A stretch of DNA of 64,000 nt from the NCBI RefSeq assembly GCF_033153115.1, contig NW_026889774.1, positions 1,302,001-1,366,000 of the forward strand. The letters are read 5' to 3'. The first letter of the stretch is position 1, and the number at the start of each line of letters is the position of its first letter. Of this stretch, positions 2,183 to 38,746 are shown one piece after another. The notes beneath the pieces are model-generated. The model searched no databases. It was not told where the DNA came from and worked only from the letters and a program-made list of their open reading frames with translations. The position numbers and the translations under genes were made by a program. The stretch comes from Saccostrea echinata. Lineage: Eukaryota.

Positions 2183-2481
2183 CTTTCCGGCAAGCTCGGA
2201 AAACATATCCGAGGTTGCTGCGGTTTTCCGAGCTTGCCGGAAAGATCCATGAAGGTAGATTAGAAAAGCTATGTATTCATTACAACTTTAGAAATAACAG
2301 TCTTGGTTTTATAAGACCCGAGTTACTGTTACTTTTTGTTCATTTACGTGCAGGTTGGACAACAAAACACGAAACTTCAGATCATATGTATTCTCAGATG
2401 ATAAACACTAAATTGACATGTCTTTCCGACATACTCTGAAAAAGATTTTTGTTGTTGTTGTTTTTTCCGAGCTTGCCGGAA
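2183..2481. repeat. Inverted/direct repeat cluster TTCCGGCAAGCTCGGAAAA
   Basis: CTTTCCGGCAAGCTCGGAAAAC (2183-2204) pairs with GTTTTCCGAGCTTGCCGGAAAG (2223-2244); third copy at ~2463-2481. Confidence 0.75.
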
Positions 2482-5400: not shown

Positions 5401-5764
5401 CGTCATGCTTTTCATCATACTTAACCTCCTAGGAGACCACTTGCATTTTCTCGCAATACTTATAAATCGTTCGTTAGAAAAATGAAATTTATAAAATAAG
5501 AAGAAAAAAATTCAGTATCTTAGAATTTCATAAAATTATATGAAGCTGTCGCATTCAGAGGTTTTCATTACAATGAGTTTCATTTTTAGTCAAACATTAT
5601 TTTCATGCGCCCCCCCTCAACAATTTGCATAGTTATTAAATGTATATGGTAAAGCAACTAGAAGTGACTTGGACCCCCCCCCCCCCCCCGGAAAACGCGG
5701 ACCCCTGTTAAGTTGGTAGGAAAAGTTATACATACAAAGTTTTAGAAGTGAAACGGAGCGGCAA

Positions 5765-5898
5765 CCCTCCCCCTTTTTTTGTTTTGTTTTGCTTATTAAG
5801 AAAATTCTGGGTTAGATTCTTTTATTTTTAATTGACTAGGGTGGAATTCCCCAACCCGACCCCCACCCCTTTGGAAAAAAATCCAGGATCCGCGCCTG
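5765..5898 (-). mobile_element. Fragment of a poly-G/GGATCC MITE family
   Basis: Ends GGAAAAAAATCCAGGATCCGCGCCTG; related to 18930-19286 and 45172-45455. Confidence 0.55.
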
Positions 5899-6899
5899 AT
5901 TTTATTTATTCTCATCTTCACTTTTCTGAAGGAAAACTTAATAATAGATTTATGTAATCCCCCACCCACTTTCTTTCTCCCCCTTGAATTTTACCGCATT
6001 GTTTCACCGTTTTTAGGGACATAAATAACATATACTTACACCTCTACTGTTAGTCTCAAAATTAACATTTCAATTTATTTTTTGAGAAGACATAAAATAA
6101 AACATATTCAATGGTATATGTATTCTTTTTCGTTTCTAGGCGATGGTATATGAATTTAATTTATTAAAGGATTATCATACTGAAAATATACTAAGTATAA
6201 CTATGTACTAATTGAGCTTTTGGAGAAAGGGTGGTAAATGCTATATTATTAAAATAATTCATCATGTAAACTTTCCAGCATTTTTACAGATAAATAAAAA
6301 AAAGTCATTGAGATTTATTATATCTAAAATGAATCATCTGACTACAGTTTTCTCTTTTTCTCTGGAGAAATTCTCAATTTTTTTTTTAACAAAATGTTTG
6401 ATAAATCAACGTATTGTTTACAGTAAAATATTGAAAAAGACTGAAATATGGGAAAAAACTTTTGGCACGTCACTGTACGTTATCAATGTAAACAATGAGA
6501 GCGTCTATATTTAGAGTTCGATGTATAACCTGGAGACGCGACGTTAGGGTTTTGCCTTAAAATTAACATAAGATACCTTTTAATAAATTTATCAATCCCA
6601 ATGACATCTCAATTACATGTATACCTTTTTACAACACACCTGAAATTTAGACGTTATATGTGCGTGTACATTTGCCTGTGTTTTGTTAGTCCCGAATTTG
6701 CCTGGAATGAGAATGAAAGTGTGGTTGTGGATACGAACTTTTATCAACTGAGTTATTGAAATAATGCATTTATCGTTTAGATTCCTACAAAATAAACATG
6801 TCTTCAATTGATATTTATTTTCTAAGAATATAATCAAAATACCAAGCTAATATTCCATTCCCCTCACGTCAAGATCCGTAAAGCAGACGACTGATAATA

Positions 6900-7044
6900 T
6901 CAGAATTTTTAAAAATTCAATGTGGCCACAGCCCACGGCCAGAACGAAACCTGTATAAATCAATCCCTTTCATGTTATAGTATTTCTAGTTAAAATATCT
7001 TTGTGGCCGATGCATGTGGCCACATCGAATTTTCCCAAAAACTG
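6900..7044. mobile_element. Small foldback MITE
   Basis: AAAATTCAATGTGGCCACA..CGGCCA ... TGGCCG..TGTGGCCACATCGAATTTT imperfect inverted arms. Confidence 0.55.
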
Positions 7045-8224
7045 AGTGAATAATGAAGAAAATTGCTTGTTTTCCGGATACGGCATAGGTTTGGATACTA
7101 CATAGCAGCATAAGAAGCTTGGATCCGCCCAAATGTTTACATATACAAGGACTTAGGTTCATAAACTTTATAAATATACATGGTTAGTGAGGATACGCAA
7201 ACTTTATTTTTCAAGTATTTTGCAGGGCCTGTTGACGTTAGCTAACGAGCCTTGCTCTTTTATCTCTTTAACGTTACGTGACTTGAGGAGAGCGGTATGC
7301 GCGACAGAGGCAACGTTGTAGCAATTTTTGAGCACACATTTTGAATGGCTCTCTTTTTTATTGAATGGAATGATTGTAATTTTCCCAGAAGGGCTAAGGC
7401 CTGTTATAAGGTTAACATTTACTCAAATTACACTGATGGGCCAACGGTAAATCTTATAATACTACCCATTCAAAAGCTACGGTTAGTAGAGTAGAACCAT
7501 GCAAGAAGTAAAGGTTACATGTAGGTTTTATTAACAGTACGCATTTGAATAAAGCAGCAAACGAACATTCATATGCAATGAGAAAATATGACATACCAGG
7601 TAATGCGTAGAACAACGAGGGAGTCATTATGCAAATGCATTTTGGCTAACATTCAACGCAACGACACGATATCTGAACTGGACAAAAATTATAAAAATAT
7701 AAGTAAACCGAATGCATGCAAGGGAAACGGATAGTGAATGTCAAACCCATATCACATACTTGATCAAATAAAGAATAATTTATAGACCTCCTCTCAGCAT
7801 GTGGATGATTTAGATACTTTTCATAACCGTACAACAAATGATAAGTAATGTCCAACTGGGATTTCAAGCTGACATATCATCTTCCTTGCATATAAAATTC
7901 TTCTTCATTAAATACGCAAACAAACAACGCAATGATCTTATTGGGAACTGAGAAGCAGTATTTTCTGCTGTGTGAAGTTATCGCCCGTATAATTTTAAAT
8001 TGCATTCATTTTTTGCATAAATAAACTTTTCTGCTAAATTCTTTTTAAAGTAAAAAGATCAAGAATAAACATTTTATAATTTATTTTAAAATAACGATTA
8101 AAATTTTCTCCATTATTTCTTCATTATTTTTTATTTATTTATTTTATTGTAAAAAACTGTGAAACATGTATGTTTCAGGCATATATGTAATTTATTTTAA
8201 AGGATTAAGTGTTACTGAGACAGA

Positions 8225-8530
8225 CGAACAAGAAATAAATAAAGAGAGAAGGAGGGAGAGAGAGAGAGAGAGGCTGGTAAGAGAGAGGGTAGAGAAAGAG
8301 AGTTGGACGAAAGACAGAGAGCGATTGGGGAGAGAGTGAGGAGGGGGAGAGAGAGTGGAGAGAGAGCGAGTGGGGAGGGAGGGGGTGATAGAGGGAAAGG
8401 GTGGAGAGAGTGAGGTGATAGAGAGGAAGGGTGGAGAGAAAGAAAGTGGGGAGAAAAAGAGAGTAAGTGGGGAGGAGAGTGTGAGTGAATGCGTGGGTGT
8501 AGAGAGGGTGAGGAGGGGAGAGAGTGAGTA
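8225..8530. repeat. GA-rich polypurine low-complexity tract
   Basis: ~300 bp of degenerate (GA)n/(GGA)n. Confidence 0.9.
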
Positions 8531-8927
8531 GTGTTACAATTTCATATTAAAAATTATGTCAGTAGTTTTTGCATATACAACTGAGCTGTGTTTTTTGCAT
8601 TTTTGATGTTGTAAATTTAGCTTTTCTGGTATGGGTACTTAAAAATTTACTCTTATTTTGACCCTATTGATATCATACTTGTATATTTCTTCTACTTGTA
8701 TAAAACAAGATATTTTAACTTGAATGTGCTGCAAAAAAATCATACCGCAAACATTGTATATGATGATAGTATTAGGAAGTAGCTTCATTTAAAGGAGGGA
8801 GAATATACTTTGCTCCCAACATACATTTGAGAGTATACAAAATATCGGGAGACGCAGTTATCTCTGGGCCTTCGCCGACCATCCCCCAACCATTGAATGA
8901 AAGCCTATCTCATTTCTAAAGGTTTTA

Positions 8928-9084
8928 TAGTAAAATTTGTCTAATCCGGACACTACTGATTCCATAGAAAATGGCCGGATTAGACAACATTTAAAACAAA
9001 TGAATTTACTGAAATGGACTTAAAGTTAACATCGTAACAAGCAAGATTTCGGATTATACATCCGGATTAGACAAGTTTTACTTG
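8928..9084. mobile_element. Tc1/mariner (pogo-like) MITE
   Basis: TA|TAGTAAAATTTGTCTAATCCGGA ... TCCGGATTAGACAAGTTTTACTTG|TA, with internal copies of CGGATTAGACA. Confidence 0.7.
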
Positions 9085-9296
9085 TATTATATAATATAGA
9101 TAAAAAGTAGGGGATCAGAGTTCTATGGGGGTCATTTTTCAACGTGTGTGGAGTTGTAGAATTACCAGCCTGGAAGGGTTTTCTACGGTGGAAAAATGAC
9201 CCTACTTGCTGTAGAATATTGACCGCGGGTCACTTTTTCACGTAGAAATTTGACCCTTCGGTCAATATTCTGCGGGGGTCACTTTTCGTCGTTACG

Positions 9297-9577
9297 CCGG
9301 CACATGAATGCTGTGTTCCAGTGTATACTGTAACTTACCCTCTGTCGAGTAGGGACATTTAGTAAATGTTTCCCGGCACATGAATGCTGTGTTCCAGTGT
9401 TTATAACCGTAACTGTAACTTACCCTCTGTTGAGTGGGGCATTTAGTAACTGTTTCCCGGCACATGAATGCTGTGTTCCAGTGTTTATAACTGTAACTGT
9501 AACTTACCCTCTGTTGAGTAGGGGCATTTAGTAACTGTTTCCCGACATATGAATGCTGTGTTCCAGTGTATACTGTA
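9297..9577. repeat. Tandem repeat, 76-85 bp unit, ~3.4 copies
   Basis: Units start GGCACATGAATGCTGTGTTCCAGTG at 9299, 9375, 9459 and 9544 (variant). Confidence 0.95.
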
Positions 9578-18343: not shown

Positions 18344-18494
18344 NNNNNNNNNNNNNNNNNNNNNNNNNNNNNNNNNNNNNNNNNNNNNNNNNNNNNNNNN
18401 NNNNNNNNNNNNNNNNNNNNNNNNNNNNNNNNNNNNNNNNNNNNNNNNNNNNNNNNNNNNNNNNNNNNNNNNNNNNNNNNNNNNNNNNNNNNNN
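18344..18494. other. Assembly gap
   Basis: Run of N. Confidence 1.
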
Positions 18495-19545: not shown

Positions 19546-20302
19546 TTGTGTGTTTTAACTTTTAGATAAAAACTTGACATTTGGTCGCCTCTCTATAGCA
19601 ATAACTCAGTCATTTTTTTACATGAAAATTAGAATTGTTCCTAGACTTAAAACAAATTCTAATTATTCACTTTTTCCGGATTATTTGTGGTCAGCTGTTT
19701 TTGATAGCATGTTTATTGATTCCTTGATTCCTTAACGATCAATAAAGGGTGACTGTGTTGTCTCACCGGCATTCTGATCCTTACATTTTGAAAATATCTA
19801 TTTTCCCCTGCATAGGTTGGTTTTGCATAAGATACCTGTATAATCCTAAATAAACGCTACTTTTGACAACAGTGGTCATTCCATTAACAAACATTCTCCG
19901 AAGAAGAAAACGAATACCACTTGAAAGTATGCAATCTTTATCAACTATCATTTATAAAATAAAATATTTACACTGTCTTCATACATGTAAAGTTCTTTCT
20001 AATATTTTTGCTTGTATATGTACAAAAGGATTCCAAATGAAATATTGAGCACAATATTTCAATCATTTTCTTTTTTTTTTTTACTATCTGCATTAGGTAC
20101 AAAACAGATGTAGATCAACCAACAATATTTTTTTTCATAGTGTTTTTAACACTTCACCAAAACATCACTCATTATATCCGTCAATGTAGCACTGTGGTAC
20201 ACAATTTAGCACATTTTTGATGATAATTTAGCACATTAATGTTGATCGTAATCTAGCACATCACAATTGTTATAATTTTTAATCTCTGACAGTCGTATGG
20301 AA

Positions 20303-20896
20303 TCACGTGTATCTAGGTGTCTCCATGCCCCACAGGAAGTTGTCAATGTGTGGAAGAAGTGTTGACGTCATGTTGTAGATATCCTCCATCGTGTTCCCAA
20401 TGGATGGAATGGAATACGTGACGTCACTGTCTAACTTCCGTTTCTTCTTTGTCGGTGTGGGATCATCCTGAAAAGGATCTCTGATCCTGATGTTGGACTT
20501 GAGAATAGACGATTCTGTAAGTTCTGGTGTGAATGAAACACAGCCGGTCTCATTGCTTGGTGACTTCGATGAAGGTGTCTCAAAGGCTGATGCGAGTGCT
20601 GGGAAGGAGAAGGGAGCGTATCCACTGGAGAGTGATGGAGCACCGAAACACGGAGGCGGATTTGGCCAAACTGACTGTGTCATATGTGGTTCTTCCATAA
20701 GAATACGCAATGTTTCCTTCACATTGTTGTGTGCTGTTTCTTCATCCACAAGAATCCGCCTACGCTTCTTGGATGTTGGTTGCAGCTGGAAAACGGATCT
20801 GGTTTTCTGTAAAGTACGTAACAGCTCGGAGATGTCACCACGAACCGGCTGTTTACTGTGATTACGATCTGTTTTTCTTCTTCCTTTGAACCAAGC
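20303..20896 (-). CDS. Terminal exon of a divergent PRD-like homeobox gene (homeodomain residues 47-60 plus C-terminal tail)
   Basis: ttttcag|GCT TGG TTC AAA GGA AGA AGA = AWFKGRRKTDR. 197 sense codons, GC content above background, basic NLS-like motifs KKRRR and PTKKKRKL. Confidence 0.85.
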   Translation of the reverse strand, partial: AWFKGRRKTDRNHSKQPVRGDISELLRTLQKTRSVFQLQPTSKKRRRILVDEETAHNNVKETLRILMEEPHMTQSVWPNPPPCFGAPSLSSGYAPFSFPALASAFETPSSKSPSNETGCVSFTPELTESSILKSNIRIRDPFQDDPTPTKKKRKLDSDVTYSIPSIGNTMEDIYNMTSTLLPHIDNFLWGMETPRYT

Positions 20897-21367
20897 CTGA
20901 AAATTCAACAATTACATAAATGAATCATAATATGTAACAGAGGAAGAATTTTGAACTTCTGTAGAATAAATTAATCTTTGTCCGAAGAATTGAACTCTAT
21001 CGATTTAGATATTTTTAGTGTGAATATTTTTTTTAAATCTATTCATTTGATCAATTTAAAGAAAGAAGATGGGGGAACAAGAAATAGAACATAGAAATGC
21101 CTATAGTGCGACAAACATGAAGGTTAAAAAAATCAAATCTCAATTATAACAAAATTTTCTTTGATATTTCATCTTATTTTAGAATATACTTTATGTAAAA
21201 TCTCCACAATTTGCAAAAATTTCACAAAGATTAAAATTATTTGCCTTTGAAATAGCATACACACACTAAAAAGGGCAAAAAGTATCACTTTTCTCAAACT
21301 ATAACACAATTTAGATATGAGTGGGTCTTCGCTCCATTTTTTTTTTTTTGGAAAGTTTATCCTCAAA

Positions 21368-22418
21368 CAGGGATGGGGTCAATTACATAGGAATGTAATT
21401 AATTAAATTACAATTACTTTCCCAAAACCTTCAATTAAATTACCATTACCATTACAAGGATTTTGAAATATAATTAATTAAATTACAATTACTTTGCAAA
21501 TGTAATTAATTAAATTACAAATTACATTTTAAGAAAACACTTATATAGTCATGAACGTTCCTTTTTATTCATATCAGATTCCGTTACATTTTTGCTCAAC
21601 ATTTACATTATTTAGATGTTTATCGATGTATCAAATACTGTGTTCCCTAACCTATGTCTATCAGGTTTGACGCTTTTTCCTGCCACACTGAAAATTCTTT
21701 CTGCTGGGGCATATGTGACAGGAATAGGATAATGACTAACAAGTTTACTCATGTTTTTACCTAATTCATATGTTTACAAAATTCTATGTCATTTTTTAAG
21801 CTTTCTGATATATTTATGTAAAACAATGGATGCATTTTGCCTTGATGGTTCCTTTTTCAGCATTCTAAGATTTCTCAAAATGTTGGTTTTTGACATATTG
21901 TGTGTCAAACTACCATAAATGCAACGTCTAAGTGTGCACTTCTAACACAAGCTGAAAACAGATTTGGCAAACAAAAGATTAGAAACCCTTGGACTATTTA
22001 ATTTAACTGTCAGTTAATAAACAACTTAATCAAAATTATTAATTTATATGTTAATTAAACACAGAGATATTATTTGGATTCAAAAGTTTTAAAGAAAATG
22101 CACAAGAGAAAAAAAATCACTAAGAAGGACAAATATTTAAATTCCTTTGACAAAAATAACTAGCAAAATATTTTGTCAAAAAGATCAGTTAAGCTTTTCT
22201 GAATGTTGTGTCTGGAGGGGAGTGGGGTATTTTTCATTCAATAAACATCATTGTAATTGAAAAGTAATTGTGAATTACATGCTTTTCTTGAAAGTAATTA
22301 ATTAAATTACAATTACATGTAATTGAAAGTTTGGTCAATTACACATTACTTTCAATTACATCGAAATTTGTAATTAATTACGGTCAATTACCATTACACA
22401 TTACCATTACCATCCCTG
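21368..22418 (-). mobile_element. Non-autonomous hAT element (1051 bp) in the homeobox intron
   Basis: TIR CAGGGATGG...CCATCCCTG; perfect 8-bp TSD TCCTCAAA (21360-21367, 22419-22426); AATTAC subterminal arrays; minus-strand remnant IPVTYAPAERIFSVAGKSVKPDRHRL of the hAT dimerisation domain (~21645-21750). Confidence 0.92.
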
Positions 22419-22426
22419 TCCTCAAA

Positions 22427-22690
22427 CTTAATTTTGCGTAAAAATGTACATGTACATTTTTTGGCTAACAAAAGCATGGAGCAAAGACCCACTAAACTTT
22501 AAAAATACCATTTTATGACACAACAATTTTTTGATATGAGTGGGTCTTTGCTCTATTTTTTTTTTTTTTTTTTTTTTTTTGTAGTTTATCCGCAAAGTGC
22601 GTAAAAAATACATTTTTGGTTAACAAAAGCATGGAGAAAAGGCCCACTGTACCTTAAAAATACACTTTTATAACACAAGATTTGCATCTT
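22427..22690. repeat. Degenerate ~160-bp tandem repeat interrupted by the hAT element (left part ~21260-21367)
   Basis: TAACAAAAGCATGGAG.AAAG.CCCACT occurs twice; GATATGAGTGGGTCTT.GCTC occurs on both sides of the hAT insert. Confidence 0.7.
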
Positions 22691-22762
22691 TCCGAGAAAT
22701 ACCTGAAGTCCATTTAGTCAAGGGTCATATCACAAACATGATTTAAGTGCCATTATTCATCA

Positions 22763-22866
22763 GGAGTTGTGTAGCGTAGTGGTTAGCGTGTTGGTCTCAA
22801 AGGCAAATGATATTCAGGATTTTTATAGCTAAGGTTCGAACCCCACGAATACCTCATTATTTTTTT
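22763..22866 (+). other. tRNA-derived Pol III promoter-like sequence (SINE head or tRNA relic)
   Basis: A-box TAGCGTAGTGG, B-box GGTTCGAACCC, downstream T-run; cloverleaf stems pair poorly. Confidence 0.55.
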
Positions 22867-24895
22867 AATAACAGAATAAAATTTTCCTCGGAATTTCATT
22901 TATTTCAATAATGAGGACATTACTCTAAATACTAAATTCACAAATTGAATATGTTTTTTTGTACACCTGAAGCTATAGGTATTCTGCATGCCCTGTTCAC
23001 CCATCTCCTCAGATCTCGTCGATTGTAAACTTATACGGAGCTTAATTTTTGCTTAATTTTAGAGTAATATGCTTCCTTTACCATGTATTCTGCTTTAAAT
23101 AGGGGACTTTATGTATTTGTAATATCATGCAGCGGCACATTTATATATACGTGTATCATCTACATGTATTTAAATATTGTTTGCCTCTTCTCGGTGTTTA
23201 TGGAGGTAAAAGATGAATTATGCTAAGATGCTCACATATTTACTTTAAATTCTCGTGTTTCTTTAATCTTATGAAATAAAAATTTCATCCTGTTGTTCAA
23301 CACAGGATCTTAATAAGCTAAGTGAATCAAACCCATATATATGTTTTTGACGTGGAAAACCTGCTTACATTGTAACTCCAACCAAGTGATAGGGCTGGTT
23401 GTATCTACCTTCCATAAACCTTATCTACAGTTAAAAAGGATTGAAAGTATATTTATATTTGTTAATGGAGAACAAAGGCCGAAAACAATTTTGAATGTAA
23501 ACTGAAAAAAAAATATGTGTCATCTTAGTCTTGAAAAATGCGTGTTTTTCAATTTAAATATTTTTATGAATAAACGTTTAATTTTGGGAAAAAATACTCT
23601 CTTCATGTAGGTGGCTGCCAATTTAATCTCGATAATTTTGTGAATTTTTTTAAACGACACATTTTGAATTTATAGCGGAAATCCTTTCCCCTCCCCCGCT
23701 TTCTCCCTAAGTCACGTTTCTCCAAGGCTTGACACAAAACCAATTTTATGAATCTACAATACACATAAAAATCCAAGATGGAAAATATCTTTTGCTTTTA
23801 ACATGTTATCTACATTATTTTTTTTTTATCAAAAACTTAATTGTATATTTAAATGTAGAGATAAAAGCAACTTCTGAAAATTTAAGACATCCCTTCTTTT
23901 CCTGCAACGCAGGCCATCCGAGCTGGATGAAACAATGGTGACATCTACAGTGATATATAAGAAACTCTATATATACGATATATAGTTTCTTATAATTATT
24001 CAAAACAAGAGATGATGGGGGGAGGGTTACCCCCCCCCCTCCCCGTATTATAAATGCATCCATCTGTTGGGTTGCTTCTATAAATATATACTGTCTAGTA
24101 AATAAAATGGACTTTCCGTTTTCGCATATAGTAACTTCAATGTATCAAACTGTAAATTCTTCATCTATTTTAAAATTATTCATGTGCCTGAATGACCATA
24201 TACAGTGGTTTTTATTTATACAAGGAAATGCGAATGAAAACGTTTACAGACCAGTTTGCCGCAATGGGATGCTATATTCAGTTAATTTCAGTAAACAGCC
24301 CTTTTTGACTTTTGATACATACTTTGTATATATAATGCACATAGCTTTCAGCTCCTGTGTTCAGCAGATCTCACAGTAAATTTATCTGTGTATTTGTACA
24401 AAAAACAATTACAATTGTTCGGAAAACAGGAGGAATAACTCAACGAAGGGAAGGGAGAATATACATCTCCTACAATTTATTCCTCTTTGATCAGGGAACT
24501 TCTGAAAACGGTATATTTTTAATAAAAGAAAACAAAACAATATTCATTTGCATAATTATAAGAGAAAATAATCTGACTGTTATGTAGCCAAATGTAATTA
24601 AAAAATTAATTGACATAAAAATTGTCAGATAAAAAAACTGCTTTCAAATTGGTATGATCACGAATACAATTTAAACATGAATTCAAGGGATAATCTTTTT
24701 TCTTCCCCTTATGGAAGGGAGGGAGTTTAATGCAAATGCGAAAATAGTCAAGGATAAGATTTGATATTCACAAAGATATCGCAATCCCCCTAATCACCTT
24801 TCTCTTTTAGATACATCGGAATCGTAATTGCTCGTCATTTTGAAGCTTATCGCAGGAGTTATCTCCCCCCACTGTGTTGTACGTCGATACACCGA

Positions 24896-25058
24896 CATAA
24901 TATTATTCATTCGTCATTTTTAAAAATATTTTCCAAACATATCGCACGTGCATAACTTTATATATCCTCAATCTACATAATATAATTATTCATTCGCCAT
25001 TTTAAAAAATATTTTTAATATATCGCACATGTTATTGTATAACTTTTATATATCTTCA
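24896..25058. repeat. Two-copy ~82-bp direct repeat
   Basis: ATTATTCATTCG.CATTTT.AAAAATATTTT...ATATCGCAC.TG...ATAACTTT.ATATATC.TCAA twice. Confidence 0.75.
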
Positions 25059-25551
25059 AAAAGATGGAGCTGTAAATTTTAAAATGATTATAAATACATG
25101 TCTTGAGACTTAAGGTGGCAGAATTCTAGCCGTTTGCATTAGTCCGGTAAACATTTCTCAATTTAACAATTTAAATCAAGAACTTGTAAAGGATCTTTTA
25201 TTCTCAATCTCTATCACACAACCCCCCCCCCCCTCCCCTCATCCTACATGAACTTATACACGTGAACTTTTTGATCGGTTGTGTCCCTATCATACTTGTT
25301 CTCAGTCCCCTATTTCATTAGTCTATAATTTACTCCTTTTATGGGTTTTTTCTCCTTATCAGCTAAGAATGTCAATACCTAACCCGGGTTATTGAGCAAA
25401 TATGAACTACATGTATGTATAAGTGCATAACTTTCCTGCACTACTTCGAAAGTAGAATTTCCACCGCAAATAAATGTCATTGAAAAGCACATACAAAATT
25501 GATATATTATATACAATTAATCTTATCATGCTAAAATTTTACGTTTTTTAC

Positions 25552-25688
25552 CTGAACTCTCTTCTCTGTTTCCCCGATGATTTCGCTAATGCACTGACGC
25601 TCGTCTTTCGTTGGAAATCCGCTGATAGCATAAACTTCCGTCATCACGTCAAGTGCAAATGCACTGAAAGTGCTGTAACGTTTGATTT
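25552..25688 (-). CDS. Homeobox exon (homeodomain residues 1-46)
   Basis: atttcag|AA ATC AAA CGT ... AGA GTT CAG|gtaaaa; xIKRYSTFSAFALDVMTEVYAISGFPTKDERQCISEIIGETEKRVQ. Splicing to 20896 gives an exact 60-aa homeodomain with F8, L13, M16, Y20, P26, R31, V45, W48, F49, R53. Confidence 0.88.
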
Positions 25689-27593
25689 CTGAAATTAATT
25701 AGCATAATTAGGTATCTCCATCAAAATGACAAGAAAATTCGTCAATTCTAGATCTTTGCGAAAATTGCATGAACTCTTTCGCCATGCCTTTTGAAAACAT
25801 ATATGCAGATTCTATATCTATTTTTTTTTTAAATGAAGGACAATTTATAGGACGATATTATTATATTTATATGCCTATATATTGTAGCGACTTATCAAAG
25901 CTAAGAAAATATTTAAGTAAAAGATATACTTGTGTTCAAATGTTTCTGAATCATTTTGTTACAAGTCTGAAATTGAATACATTTGCCCATTTCTTAGCAA
26001 CGTAGATATAAAGCGACATTTTTTTTTTTTTTTGATTAAACGAAAACGTAACTGTTTAGGAAAAGATTAAGTTTTTTTTCTTTCTCTAACACTTGACACT
26101 TAAGTGTTAAAAAAGAGATGAGCACTTTTTTTTATTTTGTCTTGAAGTGCATATTTCTTATATATACATGTAATTCCTTTCAGACAGAATATCAAAATCC
26201 TTAGTAGCAATGACGTTAAAACCAAATGTAAAATACTCATGTATATGACTGGCAAAAAGATCTACCCTCGTCTTTAAAGATGACCTCTACTCGATCTTAA
26301 ACAGTCATGTTGTTCTCTCCCCCCCCCCCCCCCCCCCGAAAAAAAACTTTATTCATAGTTTGTTGCTTGAGTCTCGTAATATACTTTATTAAAATTTATA
26401 TAAATTGATAGTAAACTTATGACTTGCATCTATATTAAGAAATATTAGCTACACAACTTAAAAAATCATATTCTCAAGTTATGTTAAGTTTTAATTCTAA
26501 CATTAAATTCCTGTAAAGTTCCGTAGCTTTAATTACGCTAATTACAGACACACACTGCCACCCCCACGAAGCTTAGGACTATTATGGAACCAAATTAGAC
26601 TTTACCACAAGACTTAGAGAATATGAACGAGTATTAAAATTGTTTCTTGGGTAAATATTTGAAGATTGATTTTCTTATTATTTCATCCATGAGATGCTGC
26701 TTAACCTGTCTTCGTGCAGATATAGATGAATCAAAATTAGTTTTCATTATGCAGGGAAGTTTGAAGTTGCCTATGCACATTAAATAATAATTTTATTAAT
26801 TAATCTAATTACATCTACATGTAATTACTTAATAATTTTGGTCCTTATGTAACCGTACCTCAGTTTGGACAGGATACGTTGTACAATACAACCGTACATG
26901 GTATATCTTTTAATGATGTCTACGGTTTACATCGTACAAATGAAGCTTTTCTGGTGTAAATAATGTTTCTTACATGCGTTATTTACAAAATTTGAAAATT
27001 TTGAAATTTTACTTTATTTTGTCAACAATATTATTTTTTTTAAAACAAAATTTAATACAAAGGGGATTGAAAATGAAATGTACCTTACTCAAAATATACA
27101 AGTACATGCAGATATGTACTAGATTAAAGTTAGATGCAACAGATTTAAAGATTATTTTATACATGTATACACGTGAAATATATCGATGATGCATTGCAGG
27201 TAAGACATAAATTCTATTAAAGTTAAAAGTTGAACATAAATAATGTTTAAATTAAACGGGATCTAAAGGTGGAAAACTTAATTTGATAAATGTGCCGACT
27301 CTTTGACTAGTACATGTACAATGTACGTTCATGTACATGTATCTTCAAACGGAACAGAGGTTTTGGATGATCTGAAGAAGTTAGGGGATTCATCCCCCCT
27401 TTCCATCTTAAGTGTAATTCACCCCTCTGAAATACTTTATATAGGTTATTCATCGACAGGTAAGATTTGGCACAAACTAACTCAACAAAATTAAATTTAC
27501 ATATTACATCTTGTGAAAATGTACATATTATCTTGTGAAAATGTACATATCTTGTGATAATGATAATTAACTTAAAAAATGTATATTTTGTTT

Positions 27594-29109
27594 GAATTGA
27601 ACATATTTTATTGACAAAGTCAAAAGGATCGGACACAAGTTCAGAAACTTAGATAGTCTTCTCCTAATACAACATTTTATAAAATTGCCAGATTAAAAAA
27701 ACATATATACATATGGTCTACTACATATACATCGTAGTAATAGAAAGGAAAAAAAAGTTCTTTAAGTGTAAAAGTATAATTTGAATTGGTAAGAAGAAAA
27801 AAAATGAAGGTTATTTTGAAAAACGACCACATTCATTTAAGAAAGTTTGAATAGTCTTGAAAAGTTCAGCATTTTGTTCAATAGTGAGAGAATCATCGCC
27901 CCATAGCATTAAAGGTACATCTATAACATATAAATAATTAAATGACAATAGCTTATTCATTAAGGAATTCCTTGCTTTCACATAATATTTACAAGCAAAA
28001 AACAAATGATATGCATCTTCTAGTAGTCCACAAGAACAATTAGGACTGGTTATTAGGTTACAGCGATATAAGTCAGAATTTAGAATACAATTATGTCTTA
28101 ATCTTGTATGAATTATGTTCAAAAACCTTTTTCCATATGAAAAATATTTTTGAGGTTTTTCAATACTGTTGTGCAGATAGTTTTTAAAAATTTTGATAGA
28201 AGTTGCCTCCCTTGTTTTAAGACTAAGGGAATTCCACTTTCTAACAGTATCAGGAATAAATGATTTATTATATAGTTCTAATCTGTATTTTGGCAAAGAA
28301 TAATTTAAGGAATTCCTGGTAGTGTATCCTGAAATATTGCCTCTTGTATCAGGTACTAAATTTTGTAAATAATTAGGTACTAAATTATTGTGCATTTTAT
28401 ACATTGTTATTAGTTTTGCTCTGTTTCTTCTGTATTCCAATGGTTCCCAACCTGTTTCCAAATATAATGAATTTCTTGAAGCAATAATTGTAAGCCCAGT
28501 AACTATTCTTGCAGCAAATAATTGTACTTTTTCAAGATTCTCAATGTCTGTTTTTGTGCATCCAGACCAAACTTCAACAGCATATTCAAGTTGTGGTCTA
28601 ATAAAAGATATATACATCTGGGATAGAATTTCTCTTGACACAGAAAATTTTAGTTTTTTAAGAAGCCCCAGCTTTTTGTATGCTTTCTGTATAATGATAT
28701 CAATATGATCAGACCATCCTAAGTTGGACGACAGAAGTATCCCAAGATGTTTGTGTTCTGTAACATATTCCAATTGGCAATTGTCAAAAAATAATTTTGG
28801 AAACTGCTGCACATTTTTTAAGTTAAAAAATACAGCTTTGGTTTTCTGTGGATTAAATTTCAATAACCATTTCTTTGACCATTCATCTAGTATTTTAAGA
28901 TCATGATTAAGATTTTGTTCAATATGATTGATATTATCTGAACATTGTTGTAAGGAATTATCGTCAGTATATAATCTACAAACAGATATCATATTTTCAG
29001 CCACATCATTTACATACAGTAAAAATAACAAGGGACCAAGTACTGAGCCCTGAGGAACTCCGGCTTTTACATGTCCTACAGAGGAAAAGTGATTTCTATA
29101 CATGACTTG
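27594..29109 (-). mobile_element. 5'-truncated CR1-group LINE, young copy
   Basis: Candidate 11-bp TSD ATATTTTGTTT at 27583-27593 and 29110-29120; 3'UTR ends with AATAAA near 27610. Confidence 0.9.
27811..29109 (-). CDS. C-terminal part of LINE ORF2 (reverse transcriptase motifs and C-terminal Cys/His region)
   Basis: GVPQGSVLGPLLFLLYVND, LYTDD, KHLG, RPQLEYAVEVW, CSCG..EDAYHLFFAC; ~430 codons with no stop. Confidence 0.93.
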   Translation of the reverse strand, partial: QVMYRNHFSSVGHVKAGVPQGSVLGPLLFLLYVNDVAENMISVCRLYTDDNSLQQCSDNINHIEQNLNHDLKILDEWSKKWLLKFNPQKTKAVFFNLKNVQQFPKLFFDNCQLEYVTEHKHLGILLSSNLGWSDHIDIIIQKAYKKLGLLKKLKFSVSREILSQMYISFIRPQLEYAVEVWSGCTKTDIENLEKVQLFAARIVTGLTIIASRNSLYLETGWEPLEYRRNRAKLITMYKMHNNLVPNYLQNLVPDTRGNISGYTTRNSLNYSLPKYRLELYNKSFIPDTVRKWNSLSLKTREATSIKIFKNYLHNSIEKPQKYFSYGKRFLNIIHTRLRHNCILNSDLYRCNLITSPNCSCGLLEDAYHLFFACKYYVKARNSLMNKLLSFNYLYVIDVPLMLWGDDSLTIEQNAELFKTIQTFLNECGRFSK

Positions 29110-29391
29110 ATATTTTGTTTTACAATTATCACTGATAATGGAACACATCGATGGGTTCAAATTTTAATGCAACAACCTATATCTTACTATCAAAATCTAA
29201 ATATGAAAATGCTTTTGTTTTTCATGTACTATTAAAAGCAAATAAAAAAAGAAAACAAACAAATCACCCCACCCCACTCCCAAAAAAATCCATGGGGAAC
29301 GGGATGCGCGTACATTGTATGCATACAGTGCTTCAACGGGCATAGGCTTACCGTTCGTTACCTTCATATTTCAATCTCTTTCGCACTATTA

Positions 29392-29541
29392 NNNNNNNNN
29401 NNNNNNNNNNNNNNNNNNNNNNNNNNNNNNNNNNNNNNNNNNNNNNNNNNNNNNNNNNNNNNNNNNNNNNNNNNNNNNNNNNNNNNNNNNNNNNNNNNNN
29501 NNNNNNNNNNNNNNNNNNNNNNNNNNNNNNNNNNNNNNNNN
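29392..29541. other. Assembly gap
   Basis: Run of N. Confidence 1.
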
Positions 29542-29990: not shown

Positions 29991-31119
29991 CTAGCATATA
30001 ATAATTATTAATTAACAAAATTGAAAGTTTCTTGTTATATTCATTTAATTTTTTTTTACATGTTATAAAACAATTTTTTTTTGATGTTTTTTTTTCAGTC
30101 GCTGATTTTATTTCAAGTAAAGTAACCATTATTAAAAATTTTAATATCTAATAAATCATTGATTAAATCTTAATTACACTGTATCAAGGCTTGATTTGAA
30201 AACAAAACTTAGAAATGTCAATTTGGACACTGGGATATAATGATGAGTGCTAATTATGAGACAAAAGAGGGCACATCAAAATAAAGATTGTTAGGTCGGG
30301 AATAAAAAATAGATTTACTTTCATTAATATTGCAACGTGTATCAATGTATACAACCCGGGGTTGGCCATTTAAGCGGATGGACGGTTTTTTAATTTGTGG
30401 AAAATTTAGCGGAATATTTGTGGAAAATTTAGCGGAAGATTTATTGAACATCTTAGCTAAAGATTTATAGGATATCTTAGCTGAAATCAAAATTATATAC
30501 CAGCACTATTAAAATATCAAGTCAAGACAAAACATAACATATTTACACTATTTATAAGTCAGTATTGGCTCTCTATCTGTTTATATGTATATTTACAAGT
30601 AAAATCTTACAGATAAAATTGTAATCAAATACGAAGGTCATTTACTTTCTCTTTTGATTTTTTCATGGCTATTACATGTAGTCCATATTACTGTTTCACC
30701 TAATGCATCAGATTGACAAGTACACAAGTATTAAAGCACATAACAATAGGCAGAAAAAAATATTTCTTTATGTAAAATCTGCTTTTTATTCCTTTAATGG
30801 TAGTTTACTAGAGTCATATTTAGTTAAGAATCTAGAAATATAGTAAAAACATAATTTACACCTACATGTATCGATCTACGCCTAATTTAAAAAAAAAAAA
30901 CATTAAAGTTAGTCACATTGAATTTGATGAACAAACAAGCATCTTTAAAGCTTTTCAAAGAATGACCGTCATCAAAATTAAACCCAATTTCCTAAAATGA
31001 CTTCTTTTTGTGACCAGCTGGTGACATGAATGTTACACTACATACTGCATTATAATGTTCTTACAGAATTTACGTTATAGATACATGTATGGCATGCGGA
31101 ACTTATAAGGTATTCAATT

Positions 31120-31886
31120 AAGGGGGCCGACTGGGATTTTCATTGCGCAATACTTCGCGCAGCATAGTAAAATAAAGCGTATTTACTCTATTAAAGTAAC
31201 TACATGTATTTTTACATAATTTATAAAAATTAACAAATTTAGGAAATCTCAGGTTAAAAAAATCTAATAACGTTTTTAAATAACTGATTTTTAAACGATT
31301 TTTCAAATGACGTGTAGATAGACGTCGTAATAGTGTGTTTTTGACGTTATGAATAACCGAAGTTCTTTAAGCGGGGTCATTAATTATGTCATAAAATAAA
31401 AAAAAAGTATAAAATATATGCTCTTGAAATTTTAAACATAGTAAATTGAGAATCTAACAATCATTTTTATTATTTTTTATGTAATTTTGTGCTATCTGTC
31501 ATGTTTTGTTATACTCCATAAAAACAGGAAAATATCATGAATTTTGATATTTTGAGATTCCCCGATCTGGAAACCAGACGGTAGATTTTTGTGTTTCTTG
31601 CACAAAATGTAAAGTATAGTATTACCGATCATATAATTTAATTTGAGCAAAAAGTTTACAGTAGCATTTGTATAATTTGCTTCGAAGTGCGAAAAAATGG
31701 TATTTTCCTATATAATCCTATAGTAAATGTACCTGTATTTTGAGATGGTCCCTAAAAAATAACCAGACGGTAGATTTTCGCTAAACTTGGCATGTTTACT
31801 GAAGTCAATGAAAGGTACATATGGTATAAAATTAAAGAGTTTCTCTATATTAATTTTCACACAATAAAACCCCAGTCGGCTCCCTT
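31120..31886. mobile_element. Kolobok-type MITE
   Basis: AAGGGGGCCGACTGGGATTTT ... AAAACCCCAGTCGGCTCCCTT with TTAA at or next to both ends. Confidence 0.7.
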
Positions 31887-34714: not shown

Positions 34715-35864
34715 TTAAATCACGTTTTGATTGAACAATTCATTAATGGCGTGTTATGAAATAATTAAACGATTGCTTGTTGCCAGTTTCACTAAAAATT
34801 GCCAGTAACTTAGATCCGCCAAGCGGAACCACCACCATTTGCTATTTCCAGCTGATTATCGAAAATGAAGGTAGACTTTTAATTAAATATAAGATAATTA
34901 CTATGCGAGGAAATCTTAATTATATATAGTTTGCGGACATTACTGCATGTCTAGTGTGATATTAACGGAATAAGTATAAACTCTGGTGCAGGCGTTTCGG
35001 AGTTTATTTGCAACATTTATTAATTTATAAGTATAGAGGCTGTATATGTACGTGTAGACACCGGTATTAAGTCCACATAACAAGACCATTTTTCAGGTGT
35101 ATGGAGTATATACATGTATACAACCACGTATACAATTTTGCATCAAAACTGCACCCAGTTTCATTTTCTGGTAGCTAAGGATCAAAATTAAGTCTAAAAT
35201 GTCTTATAAATCTGTATCAATTTAATCTTCATGCACTCTTAGATTTTTAAAAAAATGTTTCGAGATGATGTATTTCCTTTCCATTCTTCACTCTCATAAA
35301 GTTTTCAGATTGACACCCTGAATTTTGTCGTGCAAGTGCACATGACGAATAACAAGAAGTCTGACTTGTTTTAAAGATGTGCTTTAATTATAATTTTATT
35401 TTAAGTAAGACAGGTAAAAGTAGGTAGAAGTAGCTACTTTAAGTAGATTTATATACCTAGGAAGTAAAATTTCCCCCCCCCCCCCCAAAAAAAAAAAAAA
35501 TACTGTACATGTGGAGCGGCCCATTAAAGCTTTCGATATTTAACTCCGTAGATTTTTGTTTGTTTGTTTGTTTGTTTTATATGAAGAATAACGTTGTCAC
35601 TGCATAAATCCTCATGATACGACTGCTCTTCTTCTCTGCTTCACTGTTCGAATCTTTAAAATAAGAAGAAAAAATTACACAAAAATAAGAGTACCTTTTT
35701 TTGTTTGTAATAGGAATGAAACAACATAAAATTTTTAACTTAACAGGAGCTTCAAGTTTATTTAGTATTAAGACTAGAGACAAAGAGAAACTTTATGTGT
35801 TGAATGAAATTGTCTGTAATAAATGTTATTCTCATCAGAGGTGTAATAAAAATAATTTACTCAC

Positions 35865-38746
35865 TGTTGATTCCTGAATCAGGGCAGAGACATGACATCT
35901 GATGGTGTCTACAATTTCTGGGGACATGGTGTTGGCAATATCAGTGGTGTTGGTCAAAAAGTGTCCAAACTCTTCTAGCTTTGGGACAGTTGGCTGGCCA
36001 AATCTGTGTTGCTTTTCGAGACGTGACTCCCACCAAGATGTTTCCTCATCTGCCAGGCTTCCACATCTTTTCCACTTGGGGAGATCTGTCATCATGACAT
36101 TTAAGCCCCCCTGCCTTTTTTCTGGCATGGCATTGATCGGAAGTGGTGAAGCATCAAAGGCTCTGGCCAACTCCGTGATGTCCAGCTCCTGGAAGGTTGC
36201 TCTCTGCAAGGGCCATTCCTTATATGACATGATGACCCTGTCCTCCTGAAGATGGAACCTGAAGCAGTGAGGGGACTTGTGGCCAGACAGCTGGATGGGT
36301 GACCGGAGTGCCGAGCTCGGTAGTCCCAAAGATCATCCATGTATTCTGTTGTGGGCTGGGGATGGTAGGCCACTTGGACTTCCTCATGGAGGGTATCTAG
36401 GGTCTTGATGGCCATCTTCCATATGTGGATAGATATCCTTGAAAACATCTGGTCCACATCCTCATGGATATGTCCTACCATCAAGAAGGACAGCTTCATC
36501 TACAGATAAGGAAAACGAACTACTGATACTTATAAGTATATATGTTATTACAATATTTTGAAAATTCTCTGAATGAGATTTTTTAAAAACTTTTTGACCA
36601 GTCTTTGGAGATGGTTATAATAACCATACCTTTTTAAATACTTTCATGAGAACCAAACTCCCAAGGAACGCCATCATGATGAATTTTTTGCCCTTTGCTG
36701 AATTGTCGGCCTGCAAGTAGAGTATGGGAGGCAACCGTCTTTGCTGCAATGAAAGGAATATTTTAAGTCTTAATTTGACCGATATAATAAACAAAACAAT
36801 GTTGTAAAATTGATTACAGTAGGGAATGCCAGGCAAATTTACAAAGCACATATATTATAAAACTATCTTACTGAATAAATTATTATATTATAAAAACTGA
36901 ATGTGTTCGTACCATAAGTAGATATTATTAAAGAATTAAAGATCTGAATAAGTGAAAATGGTTTATAGTTTCTAGATATATACCTGTGCAATGTCATCAA
37001 AGACTCTCAGCAAGCAATTCATTGATATTGGAATCACAGGAGAATTTGTCTGTTCATGTGAAGACATAGGATTTTCATTGACCATGGGCCAAGATTCCTG
37101 TGACGTGGTGATGGATCCTGGTGAGGCTGACATCTCCCTGTTAAAATAAATTTCATTGAGAAAATAAAAAAAAAAGAAATTGCAACAGACATGCACAGAA
37201 AGAAAGACAGATATAGAGCCAAGTCTAATAACTACGTGTAGTTGTCTGCTGCTTTGGACTAAAAATGATTGTGGTATATAGGGATTTTATTGTCGATAAA
37301 TTAGTTTTAAACCTCATTTGAAAACTTTTGAAAAGATAGAGACGGAGGGGGAGGGTATGAAGGGCCATTGTGCTTTAAAATTTGTAATCATCAAACCTTA
37401 ATTTAAAACTATAGTCAAAATTATGTTTACCTTATGATATGAGGGTAATCTGGGTAGATTTGTCTTCGCCTGGTCTATATTGTCGATGATAATCGAACAA
37501 TACTTCTGTGGGTTGTCTCTTGCTTTCTTAATGTGCATGTAGTACTTTTCTCGCGCAATTCTACAATTAAAAGACACAATATTACATAATTGATCATTGT
37601 CTGTCATTGATATTACATACCCTGACATATCCATTGCCACTTCCTTTCTAAAGACATAAACAAAAGACTCGGTTTTCACTTAGTTACAGTGAAATCTTAA
37701 GATAAGTTCCAGCTAATTTTTCAGAAACTAAATTGGTTGTATTTAAACTGTACTAGCTGCTTTAAAAGATTTACATTTAATGTTTTACATTATATATAAT
37801 AGTATATTCTTGATATATAATTTTATTTTCCTCTAATTTTAATTACTGGTATACAAATATGTTCCTGCCCCCGGGGATATCTATATTGTACTGGTATTTG
37901 CCTTTTAACATTGCCACTGCATAAATGATGGCTTTAAGTTAGACACACATTCAAGTGATATTACTACAATTTCTTATCACTGAAATGAAATTACTTCTGA
38001 ACAAGAAGATGGGCTTTCTTTTGCTCTTCTAACAGCAGTAACTGTACCTTAGATAGGTTCCCAGCCTTTTGCATTTCTAATCATGGAACACTCCTTACAT
38101 TCTGTAAATGTGGTTCTCTACAAAGATTTGAAAAAAAAAATGACGAGTATAAATTCATATAGATGTTGATAACATAAAGTGTTCCCTTTAAGCATGAAGG
38201 ACAGATGTTGTACAGTGTGCCATTGGCAACACAAGATAATAATTTTTTTTTGTAAAAAGAAAAATATTTACATTTTAATTTAGATTTTCAAACTCTGATT
38301 TTATACAACTCTTAATTATTTACTAAAACTTTTGGTTGAGTTCAGCGTGACTAAATCTTTCATGCATGACTATAAGAATGCATGCTCTTTAATAAAATGT
38401 ATTCAATGTACATTAATATCAGTATGCATGGCAATAAAAACATTCAATGATACATAAATTATGGATTTAGATAATTTAAAAAAAATCTACCATGCCCCTG
38501 ATGCTTTGATTTCTGGAAAACGGTCATTAAAATGCTCCAGACAGTAGGGGTTGCTGTGTCCACTTGCGTACTCCTCATACATGTTGTGAATGGAGTAACA
38601 TGTTGGGAGCATCACATTCCCATTGTTTGGCTGGACCTCCCCATGGGCTCTACCTGAGCTCCTGATGAAATTTACAACATCAGCTCTCCGGGGCCTGTCA
38701 TATTTGTGTGAGGTTCTTGCATCTCTTCCCCTTCAGCACATAGTAT
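35865..38746 (-). pseudogene. Spliced DDE transposase pseudogene (Sola1/DUF7869-like), six exons
   Basis: GT-AG exons 38491-38746, 37995-38117, 37431-37560, 36984-37137, 36630-36743, 35865-36499. Motifs FTECKEC, SIIIDNIDQAKTNLP, HVTGILAHG, LYLQADNS, LSFLMVGHIHEDVDQMFSRIS. Premature stops and frameshifts present. Confidence 0.8.

What the first reader, a model, noticed from the sequence alone, without database searches (positions are those of the whole stretch)
20303..25688. Hidden, highly divergent K50/G51 PRD-like homeobox gene
Seen: two GT-AG exons 4.65 kb apart splice in frame to a 60-aa homeodomain, xIKRYSTFSAFALDVMTEVYAISGFPTKDERQCISEIIGETEKRVQ|AWFKGRRKTDRNHS. Established: the codon 46/47 intron is characteristic of PRD-class genes; N51 and R5 are near-invariant contacts to the TAAT core; HOPX (WFKQR) is a known homeodomain that does not bind DNA. 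Here residue 51 is Gly and residue 5 is Tyr, while the hydrophobic core is kept. Inference: a lineage-specific, fast-evolving homeobox gene, either with altered specificity or acting as a non-DNA-binding cofactor. I do not recognise it as any named family. It is the best candidate for novel biology in this window.
Basis: partly seen in the sequence, partly recalled or inferred. Interest (0 to 1): 0.85.

Follow-up and report, generated by a model that had tools for sequence, protein, structure and literature searches.

The report
Oyster-only homeobox gene lacking Asn51
The two exons form a real, spliced, transcribed homeobox gene found only in true oysters. Its DNA-reading helix has lost the almost universal Asn51, and it was already listed in 2015 as Pacific-oyster gene Cgi_CUT2, so it is an odd member of a known kind, not a new one.

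Summary
Minus-strand exons 25688-25552 and 20896-20303 have GT..AG borders. Transcript-like contigs of two public runs join them exactly. Together they encode a homeodomain with Tyr5, Lys50 and Gly51.

The genome is Saccostrea echinata. A near-identical inverted twin lies 4.8 Mb away on the same contig. It is annotated as uncharacterized LOC133192841, with the same homeodomain, and passes Pfam Homeodomain (32.8 bits against a cut-off of 22.9).

Orthologues occur in Saccostrea cucullata, Crassostrea, C. virginica and Ostrea edulis. None has Asn51 (they have Gly or Arg), all have Tyr5, and all keep the 46/47 intron. So the oddity is old and conserved, not an assembly error.

The family is not unnamed. 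Paps et al. 2015 list the Pacific oyster orthologue as Cgi_CUT2 (CGI_10022104) in an unsupported "CUT Clade I".
- the intron sits at 46/47;
- the best solved-structure matches are Aristaless, OTX2, DUX4 and Paired;
- there is no CUT domain on this contig.

The fold-core residues and two C-terminal motifs, one of them NLS-like, are conserved. The base-contact positions 47 and 51 vary. The likeliest function is a nuclear homeodomain protein without canonical TAAT reading. Whether it binds DNA at all is untested, and the start codon was not located.

The parts
25552..25688 (-). Exon A. It holds two bases of a split codon plus homeodomain residues 2-46 (helix 1, helix 2 and the start of helix 3).
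   Evidence: Sequence and splice sites; translation; Pfam Homeodomain profile 2-45; RNA-like contig X1 record 8 covers 25551-25690 with no differences.
25666..25680 (-). Codons for R4-Y5-S6-T7-F8. These are invariant in all five oyster homeodomains compared. Tyr replaces the usual Arg5.
20897..25551 (-). Intron of 4655 bases, GT..AG, between homeodomain codons 46 and 47. It contains repeats.
   Evidence: Joint 20895->25551 in X1 and X2. Orthologous ORF fragments P0019, P0021 and P0022 all end at ...KRVQ and then read into an intron.
20306..20896 (-). Exon B coding part, 197 codons: homeodomain residues 47-60 followed by a 183-residue C-terminal region.
   Evidence: Contigs of X1, X2 and X3 cover it. 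Orthologues share 47-81% identity.
20882..20884 (-). GGA codon for Gly at homeodomain position 51, where Asn is near-universal.
   Evidence: It is unchanged in the contigs of three runs. Orthologues have G or R here.
20432..20491 (-). Conserved motif IRIRDPFQDDPTPTKKKRKL. It ends in a stretch like a classical nuclear localisation signal.
   Evidence: Alignment A1; coordinates. The NLS reading is an inference from the sequence.
20327..20389 (-). Conserved C-terminal motif MEDI..TS.LLPHIDNFLWG.
   Evidence: Alignment A1; coordinates. No Pfam or Atlas match.
20303..20305 (-). Stop codon TGA.
20250..20302 (-). Start of the 3' UTR. The transcript contig runs on about 320 bases beyond the stretch that was laid.
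   Evidence: X1 record 1 is 976 letters long, and only letters 2-653 lie on 20250-20901.

Best explanation
This is the Saccostrea echinata orthologue of the Pacific-oyster homeobox gene Cgi_CUT2. It is one of two near-identical copies in this assembly. The gene is confined, as far as the databases show, to true oysters (Saccostrea, Crassostrea, Ostrea). It has at least three exons. An upstream exon that I could not locate supplies the start. Exon A encodes homeodomain residues 2-46. Exon B encodes residues 47-60 and a largely unstructured tail of about 180 residues with conserved short motifs. It is spliced at the PRD-type 46/47 position and is transcribed. Shown: the homeodomain core (F8, Y20, F25-P26, R31, I34, W48, F49, R53) and K50 and K54 are invariant among oysters. 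Positions that normally read bases differ from the canon: 5 is always Tyr, 47 varies (A/S/N/Q) and 51 is G or R. Inferred mechanism: the protein enters the nucleus through its KKKRKL-type signal. It uses a homeodomain that still folds but no longer reads TAAT in the canonical way. Its conserved C-terminal motifs probably recruit partners. My odds are about 55% for a protein-binding or non-specific nucleic-acid-binding cofactor (it works like HOPX without being HOPX), about 35% for a DNA binder with a new specificity, and about 10% for something else. By class it is better described as PRD-like than as CUT.
For: Gene structure and translation. Species, the annotated twin and orthologues. Pfam Homeodomain above the cut-off for P0001 (32.8 bits) and for O. 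edulis P0110 (30.1 bits). P0001 and P0110 are 55% identical over the full length, E 3e-89. Published orthologue Cgi_CUT2, whose homeodomain shares GETEKRVQ.WFKG. Spliced joint and exon-only coverage in X1-X3. Position-by-position conservation. Exons differ at 0.55% between the two copies, against 5.2% (about 1.9% counting mismatches only) in the aligned non-exon DNA around them. PRD-like affinity: the best PDB sequence matches are Aristaless (8.3e-5), OTX2, DUX4, Paired, ALX4, CRX and PHOX2B, with no CUT-class chain at E<=1. CUT domains occur only on contigs C20, C54, C5 and C16, and the homeodomains beside them run to profile 54-57 in one ORF, so they have no 46/47 intron. The 46/47 intron is reported for the PRD-class genes otp, rx and hbn (PMC2938728).
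Against: The start codon and 5' exon were not found. There is no ATGG|GT on the minus strand between 25689 and 42119. The candidates beside the twin lie in a twin-specific repeat insertion. The runs are only guessed to be RNA, come from one study, and are contigs rather than reads. The AlphaFold model is poor (mean pLDDT 49), so the fold is inferred from sequence only. Invariant R4, K50, R53 and K54 are what a DNA binder would keep, so loss of DNA binding is not shown. No dN/dS could be computed because no orthologous DNA was available. The C. virginica reference models disturb the first half of the homeodomain (P0012 and P0115).
Confidence: 0.85

Rival explanations
1. It is a sequence-specific transcription factor with a new DNA specificity. 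The homeodomain still binds DNA through K50, R53, K54 and the R4-Y5 arm, and Gly or Arg at 51 changes the core that is read.
For: R4, Y5, K50, R53, K54 and R31 are invariant in five oyster homeodomains. The basic stretch after helix 3 (RK.DR) is conserved. The tail is NLS-like.
Against: Positions 47 and 51 vary among close relatives (A/S/N/Q and G/R). That is unexpected if they read a fixed motif. Arg5 and Tyr25 are also replaced. By established knowledge, Asn51 is the near-invariant adenine contact of homeodomains.
Confidence: 0.35
2. It is a CUT-class gene, as filed in the literature (CUT Clade I): a derivative of Cux, Onecut or Cmp that lost its CUT domain.
For: Paps et al. 2015 place Cgi_CUT2 with Cgi_CUT1, which has a CUT domain, in 'CUT Clade I'.
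Against: The same paper marks that clade as having no monophyletic support. There is no CUT domain on contig C25. The homeodomains next to CUT domains in this genome have no 46/47 intron. No CUT-class chain is among the 51 PDB matches at E<=1, whereas PRD-class chains lead the list. Most other 'CUT Clade I' members show PRD-like RR.R..FS...QVWFQNR.
Confidence: 0.1
3. It is a decaying or neutrally drifting homeobox relic, transcribed but without function.
For: The homeodomain is very divergent and has lost canonical contact residues. C. virginica reference models read part of the homeodomain in another frame (P0012) or start at Met16 (P0115). No start codon was found in the window.
Against: Open frames are intact in both S. 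echinata copies. Full-length orthologues span three oyster subfamilies, with 24 invariant homeodomain positions and strongly conserved C-terminal motifs. The exons are several-fold (about 3.5x counting mismatches only, about 9x with gap columns) better conserved than the flanking DNA between the copies. An ENA contig from C. virginica keeps the frame (P0022).
Confidence: 0.05
4. The 'second copy' is not a paralogue. It would be the other haplotype of the same locus, left in the assembly and placed inverted 4.8 Mb away. This concerns copy number only, not the nature of the gene.
For: The colinear block is at least 61 kb and open-ended on one side, at 92-99.5% identity with transposon presence/absence differences. 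That is typical of oyster haplotypes. Many other homeobox loci occur as equal-scoring pairs on different contigs. The RNA contigs show a third, recombinant combination of the differences.
Against: Colinearity ends sharply at window 40912 inside sequence without N runs on the twin side. Both copies lie on one contig.
Confidence: 0.5

Closest known systems
Cgi_CUT2 (CGI_10022104), 'CUT Clade I' of Paps et al. 2015 (PMC5322547)
   Same: Orthologue. The homeodomain has the same RY(S/T)TFS, INGFP/ISGFP and IIGETEKRVQ.WFKG strings. Crassostrea-type fragments P0003, P0006 and P0019 match both the published homeodomain and the window's C-terminal region.
   Different: It comes from another species (about 65% identity in exon A and about 51% in exon B). 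The published class label CUT is not borne out by my tests. The paper does not discuss the missing Asn51.
PRD-like (paired-like) homeobox genes such as aristaless, Otx and Pitx
   Same: The intron lies between codons 46 and 47. K50 is present as in Otx, Pitx and Gsc. The best sequence matches among solved structures are of this class.
   Different: There is no Asn51, no Arg5 and no Val/Ile47, and Pfam finds no paired domain or OAR. Identity to any named family is too low for orthology, and the gene is absent outside oysters.
HOPX
   Same: It is a homeodomain at the very N-terminus of a small protein, with a non-Asn residue at 51. It serves as a model for a homeodomain that works without binding DNA.
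   Different: It is not an orthologue. The oyster Hopx A and B sequences (..WFQHRLA.WR.QQ) are distinct genes. HOPX is about 73 residues with no tail, whereas this protein has about 180 further residues and keeps R53, K54 and a basic stretch.
Lopx (Barton-Owen et al. 2018, PMC6118893)
   Same: It is a lophotrochozoan-restricted orphan homeobox family that general trees have mistaken for CUT class.
   Different: Lopx is Cgi_Hbx2, with the canonical KIWFQNRRRKD and a different helix 1-2. It is not this gene.

Membership tests
Homeodomain (Pfam PF00046) | Profile match above the curated cut-off | tested here: met
   P0001 (the twin copy, with a homeodomain identical to the window's) scores 32.8 bits against 22.9. 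O. edulis P0110 scores 30.1 bits. Window exon A alone scores 18.2 bits over profile 2-45. The window's joined exons were not submitted, by rule.
Homeodomain (Pfam PF00046) | Hydrophobic core residues F8, L16, F20, W48, F49 and R53 | tested here: met
   F8, M/L16, Y20, W48, F49 and R53 are present and conserved in five oysters.
Homeodomain (Pfam PF00046) | Asn51, the adenine contact of helix 3 | tested here: not met
   Gly in Saccostrea and in the Crassostrea fragments (P0003, P0006) whose helix 3 matches the published C. gigas Cgi_CUT2; Arg in C. virginica and O. edulis. RNA contigs confirm GGA.
Homeodomain (Pfam PF00046) | Three-helix fold | tested here: inconclusive
   AlphaFold on a 15-row alignment gave mean pLDDT 49. 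It predicted helices at 8-24 and 29-59 with no resolved turn. I ran no fold search on this model.
PRD / PRD-like class | Intron between homeodomain codons 46 and 47 | tested here: met
   It is conserved in Crassostrea and C. virginica fragments. Literature: PMC2938728.
PRD / PRD-like class | Closest sequence affinity to PRD-class homeodomains | tested here: met
   In PDB phmmer, Aristaless, OTX2, DUX4, Paired, ALX4, ceh-37, PHOX2B and CRX lead, but only at E 8e-5 to 1e-2. No phylogeny was made.
PRD / PRD-like class | Companion paired domain, OAR or octapeptide | tested here: not met
   Pfam finds no other domain in P0001. These companions are optional for PRD-like genes.
CUT class | CUT domain upstream of the homeodomain | tested here: not met
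   PF02376 matches only on contigs C20, C54, C5 and C16, and none on C25. Paps et al. also report none in Cgi_CUT2.
CUT class | Homeodomain similarity and gene structure like Cux, Onecut or Cmp | tested here: not met
   No CUT-class chain appears among PDB matches at E<=1. The homeodomains linked to CUT domains in this genome are uninterrupted to profile 54-57.
Cgi_CUT2 orthology group (oyster-specific) | Shared homeodomain strings plus a shared C-terminal region with the IRIRDPF..DPTPTKK.RKL and ..LLPH.D.FLWG motifs | tested here: met
HOPX | Orthology to Hopx (..WF.HRLA.WR.QQ, about 73 residues) | tested here: not met
   The oyster Hopx A and B sequences in PMC6118893 differ throughout. This protein has 244 residues.

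The most novel reading that the evidence does not exclude
True oysters carry a private homeodomain protein that lost the canonical base contacts (Arg5, Val47, Asn51) before the Ostrea/Crassostrea/Saccostrea split. It has since been kept under purifying selection as a nuclear, non-TAAT-reading cofactor. That would be a convergent, HOPX-like use of the fold with its own conserved C-terminal partner-binding motifs, and possibly a recent duplication in S. echinata.
Probability: 0.4. Interest if true: 0.45.

Novelty: new member of a known kind. Interest (0 to 1): 0.3.

Why it matters
Lineage-specific homeobox genes are a recognised source of developmental novelty in molluscs, and this one has only ever been listed, not studied. 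Two points are useful. First, its published class label (CUT) is probably wrong, and PRD-like fits better. Second, the missing Asn51 is conserved across three oyster subfamilies while the rest of the domain stays constrained. That makes the gene a clean natural test of what a homeodomain does once it can no longer read TAAT. The finding does not change general understanding, because many such divergent orphans are known.

Tried and rejected
- A word-indexed search with the homeodomain part of P0001 found only itself.
- An exhaustive phmmer search found, beyond oyster fragments, only unspecific multi-homeodomain arrays from nematodes, fungi and insects, plus single homeodomains of unidentified origin (Ala-rich proteins, no source checked). 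These are not relatives.
- Lopx and Hopx were checked as possible identities and rejected.
- Structure prediction was too poor to use. The Atlas search of the C-terminal region gave nothing.
- The 5' exon was sought as ATGG followed by GT. Nothing plausible lies within 16 kb upstream in the window; the site at 42120 lies in repeat-like sequence. Beside the twin, all GT-donor candidates lie in a 7.36-kb high-copy repeat insertion that the window lacks.
So I could read neither the annotated exon structure of LOC133192841 nor orthologous DNA for dN/dS.
The joined rows printed were for counting residues only.
- The N runs at 18344-18494 and 29392-29541 were left as they are.


Full report
**What is there.** On the minus strand, exon A (25688-25552) is preceded by ...aatttcag and followed by gtaaaa. 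Exon B (20896-20303) is preceded by ...attttcag and runs for 197 codons to a TGA at 20305-20303. Read from 25686, exon A gives IKRYSTFSAFALDVMTEVYAISGFPTKDERQCISEIIGETEKRVQ. Exon B begins AWFKGRRKTDRNHS. Exon A alone matches Pfam Homeodomain in exact register (profile 2-45, 18.2 bits, E 0.0022).

**The genome and the twin copy.** The window is contig C25:1302001-1366000 of a 923-Mb genome. A protein search with exon B returned 'uncharacterized protein LOC133192841 [Saccostrea echinata]' (P0001, 244 aa) at 99% identity, on a contig of 29,015,514 bases, which is the length of C25.
- P0001 begins MEIKRYSTF... and is the exact product of a second copy at C25:6129521-6135731 on the other strand.
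- The window's copy has an identical exon A. Exon B differs at four bases: two non-synonymous (Q/E at 20851, V/L at 20845) and two synonymous.
- P0001 has the window's homeodomain letter for letter. It passes Pfam Homeodomain at 32.8 bits against a cut-off of 22.9, profile 2-56. This fixes the numbering as Tyr5, Lys50, Gly51.

**Transcription and splicing.** Three public runs from one study hold about 5-12% of the sampled words of window:20250-26200. In the best run (12%) that is about the share the two exons make up.
- Their contigs cover exon B and the 3' UTR. X1 record 1 spans 20250-20901 and runs on about 320 letters further. X1 record 8 covers exon A (25551-25690) with no differences.
- The unique parts of the intron (23036-25423) have no depth.
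- One contig each in X1 and X2 carries the joint 20895->25551, skipping 4655 bases, with ends CT..AC (GT..AG on the minus strand).
- The genome holds no intron-less copy, so the joint is best read as spliced RNA.
- The runs are only guessed to be RNA and are contigs, so level, stage and tissue are unknown.
- The GGA codon of Gly51 is unchanged in all three runs, so it is not an assembly error. X3 carries the window's variant. X1 and X2 carry a mixed variant: E at 20851 without L at 20845.

**Relatives.** Exon B finds S. cucullata LOC134248040 (81% identity), Crassostrea-type ORFs from Logan contigs (about 51%), C. virginica LOC111124159 and O. edulis LOC125678865.
- The O. edulis model (P0110, 258 aa) is full length. 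It is 55% identical to P0001 (E 3e-89) and passes Pfam Homeodomain at 30.1 bits.
- Short ORFs from other oysters (P0019, P0021, P0022) carry the exon-A homeodomain part. All end at ...KRVQ and then read into an intron, so the 46/47 intron is conserved.
- An exhaustive phmmer search of 1.84 billion representatives gave only nine hits below 1e-10. The specific ones are all oyster fragments. The rest are multi-homeodomain arrays from Caenorhabditis, fungi, stick insects and metagenomes that score by summing weak repeats.
- On this evidence the family is confined to Ostreidae. A Pinctada sequence in the 2015 supplement (..GETHLRVASWFKYQAR) may be a more distant relative. I did not test that.

**Already in the literature.** Paps et al. 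2015 (PMC5322547) classified 136 C. gigas homeobox genes. Their supplement gives 'CUT_Clade_I_Cgi_CUT2' (gene model CGI_10022104) with the homeodomain SGRYTTFSMFALDILKEFYHINGFPSPKSERTKICEIIGETEKRVQNWFKGQKVD, plainly the orthologue.
- The paper marks CUT Clade I as having no monophyletic support and notes that this gene has no CUT domain.
- No other paper in the library mentions it.
- It is neither Lopx (= Cgi_Hbx2, canonical WFQNRRRK) nor oyster Hopx A/B.

**Which class.** Three tests favour PRD-like over CUT.
1. The intron sits at 46/47, as in the PRD-class genes otp, rx and hbn (PMC2938728). In this genome dozens of homeobox hits stop at profile 44-47. The four homeodomains next to CUT domains (on C20, C54, C5, C16) run on to profile 54-57 in one ORF.
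2. No CUT domain lies on C25.
3. Among solved structures the best sequence matches are Aristaless (8.3e-5), OTX2, DUX4, Paired, ALX4, ceh-37, PHOX2B and CRX. No CUT-class chain appears at E<=1.

The scores are weak and I built no tree. 'PRD-like orphan' is therefore the better label, not a proven one.

**What the conservation says.** I compared five oyster homeodomains.
- Invariant positions are R4, Y5, S6, T7, F8, Y20, G24, F25, P26, T27, E30, R31, I34, G39, E40, K43, R44, Q46, W48, F49, K50, R53, K54 and D56.
- Variable positions include 47 (A/S/N/Q), 51 (G/R), 52 and 55.
- So the fold core and several basic residues are held, while two of the canonical major-groove readers drift and Arg5 is always Tyr.
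- Outside the homeodomain, the conserved islands are RGD.S.LL..L.K..S.FQL, VWP.P, FPAL, SF.P.LTESS, IRIRDPF..DPTPTKK.RKL (NLS-like) and ..ED I...TS..LPH.D.FLWG at the C-terminus. Pfam and the ESM Atlas give no name for these.
- Between the window and its twin, the exons differ at 4 of 731 bases (0.55%). The 6.4 kb of aligned non-exon DNA differs at 5.2% with gaps, or about 1.9% counting mismatches only.
- Together these results argue for purifying selection, but no dN/dS could be computed.

**Most likely function.** This part is inferred. I read it as a nuclear protein whose homeodomain still folds but does not read TAAT in the canonical way, and whose conserved C-terminal motifs bind partners. 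I put about 55% on a cofactor or non-specific nucleic-acid binder, about 35% on a DNA binder with new specificity (R4, K50, R53 and K54 are invariant) and about 10% on something else. The AlphaFold model was too poor (mean pLDDT 49) to help.

**Open points.**
- The start codon is not located. P0001 takes only 'M' and one base from an upstream exon. The window has no ATGG|GT on the minus strand for 16 kb upstream. The GT-donor candidates beside the twin lie in a 7.36-kb high-copy repeat insertion that the window lacks. O. edulis has 12 residues before the homeodomain.
- The window's copy was not returned as a separate annotated protein. In that narrow sense it may be unannotated.
- The twin belongs to an inverted colinear block of at least 61 kb (C25:1282001-1342912 against 6175477-6107064) with one sharp end at window 40912. 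I could not decide whether it is a true duplication or a retained haplotype.

**Verdict.** The gene is neither unnamed nor new: it is the S. echinata orthologue of Cgi_CUT2. The useful additions are the corrected class, the finding that loss of Asn51 is ancestral and conserved in oysters, the conserved C-terminal motifs, and the evidence of splicing.

Noticed in passing
window 1-40912 and beyond (C25:1282001-1342912) against C25:6175477-6107064: An inverted colinear twin block of at least 61 kb lies 4.8 Mb away on the same contig. Identity is 92-99.5%, with transposon presence/absence differences. It ends sharply at window 40912 and is open-ended on the other side. It could be a retained haplotype or a true inverted duplication.
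   Followed up: partly
window 1714-7257: The twin lacks this 5.5-kb stretch: blocks on either side abut at 6151123 and 6150858. The stretch lies inside the Ginger1-like element that another note of the scan places at 423-9300. The twin could therefore serve as an empty-site comparison for that element.
   Followed up: no
L006/L009, C25:6117242-6124602 (twin only); the insertion point corresponds to window 31118-31123: This is a 7.36-kb insertion present only in the twin. Its flanks overlap by 6 bases on the window, like a target-site duplication. Its last 900 bases occur in at least 40 places in the genome at 91-99% identity.
   Followed up: partly
window 27814-29160 (-): A 449-codon ORF with a reverse-transcriptase domain (PF00078, 43 bits). 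It is a retroelement fragment 2 kb upstream of exon A on the same strand.
   Followed up: partly
window 35838-36499 (-): Two overlapping ORFs match DUF7869 (70.9 bits for 36104-36499). This is probably a broken transposon gene.
   Followed up: no
whole genome G000: Many homeobox hits come as equal-scoring pairs on different contigs, for example C8:306913 with C1:38640618, C16:29337757 with C42:3743887, C25:3185681 with C35:1838163, and C30:35454885 with C54:27786610. This suggests widespread duplicated or uncollapsed blocks in this assembly.
   Followed up: no
P0012, P0115 and P0022 (Crassostrea virginica LOC111124159): The older reference model XP_022322729 reads the first half of the homeodomain in another frame. 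The newer XP_078326261 starts at the Met equivalent to position 16. An ENA contig (P0022) keeps the full frame. This could be a model error, a polymorphic frameshift or decay in that species.
   Followed up: partly
window 18344-18494 and 29392-29541: Two N runs of about 150 bases lie inside the colinear block.
   Followed up: no
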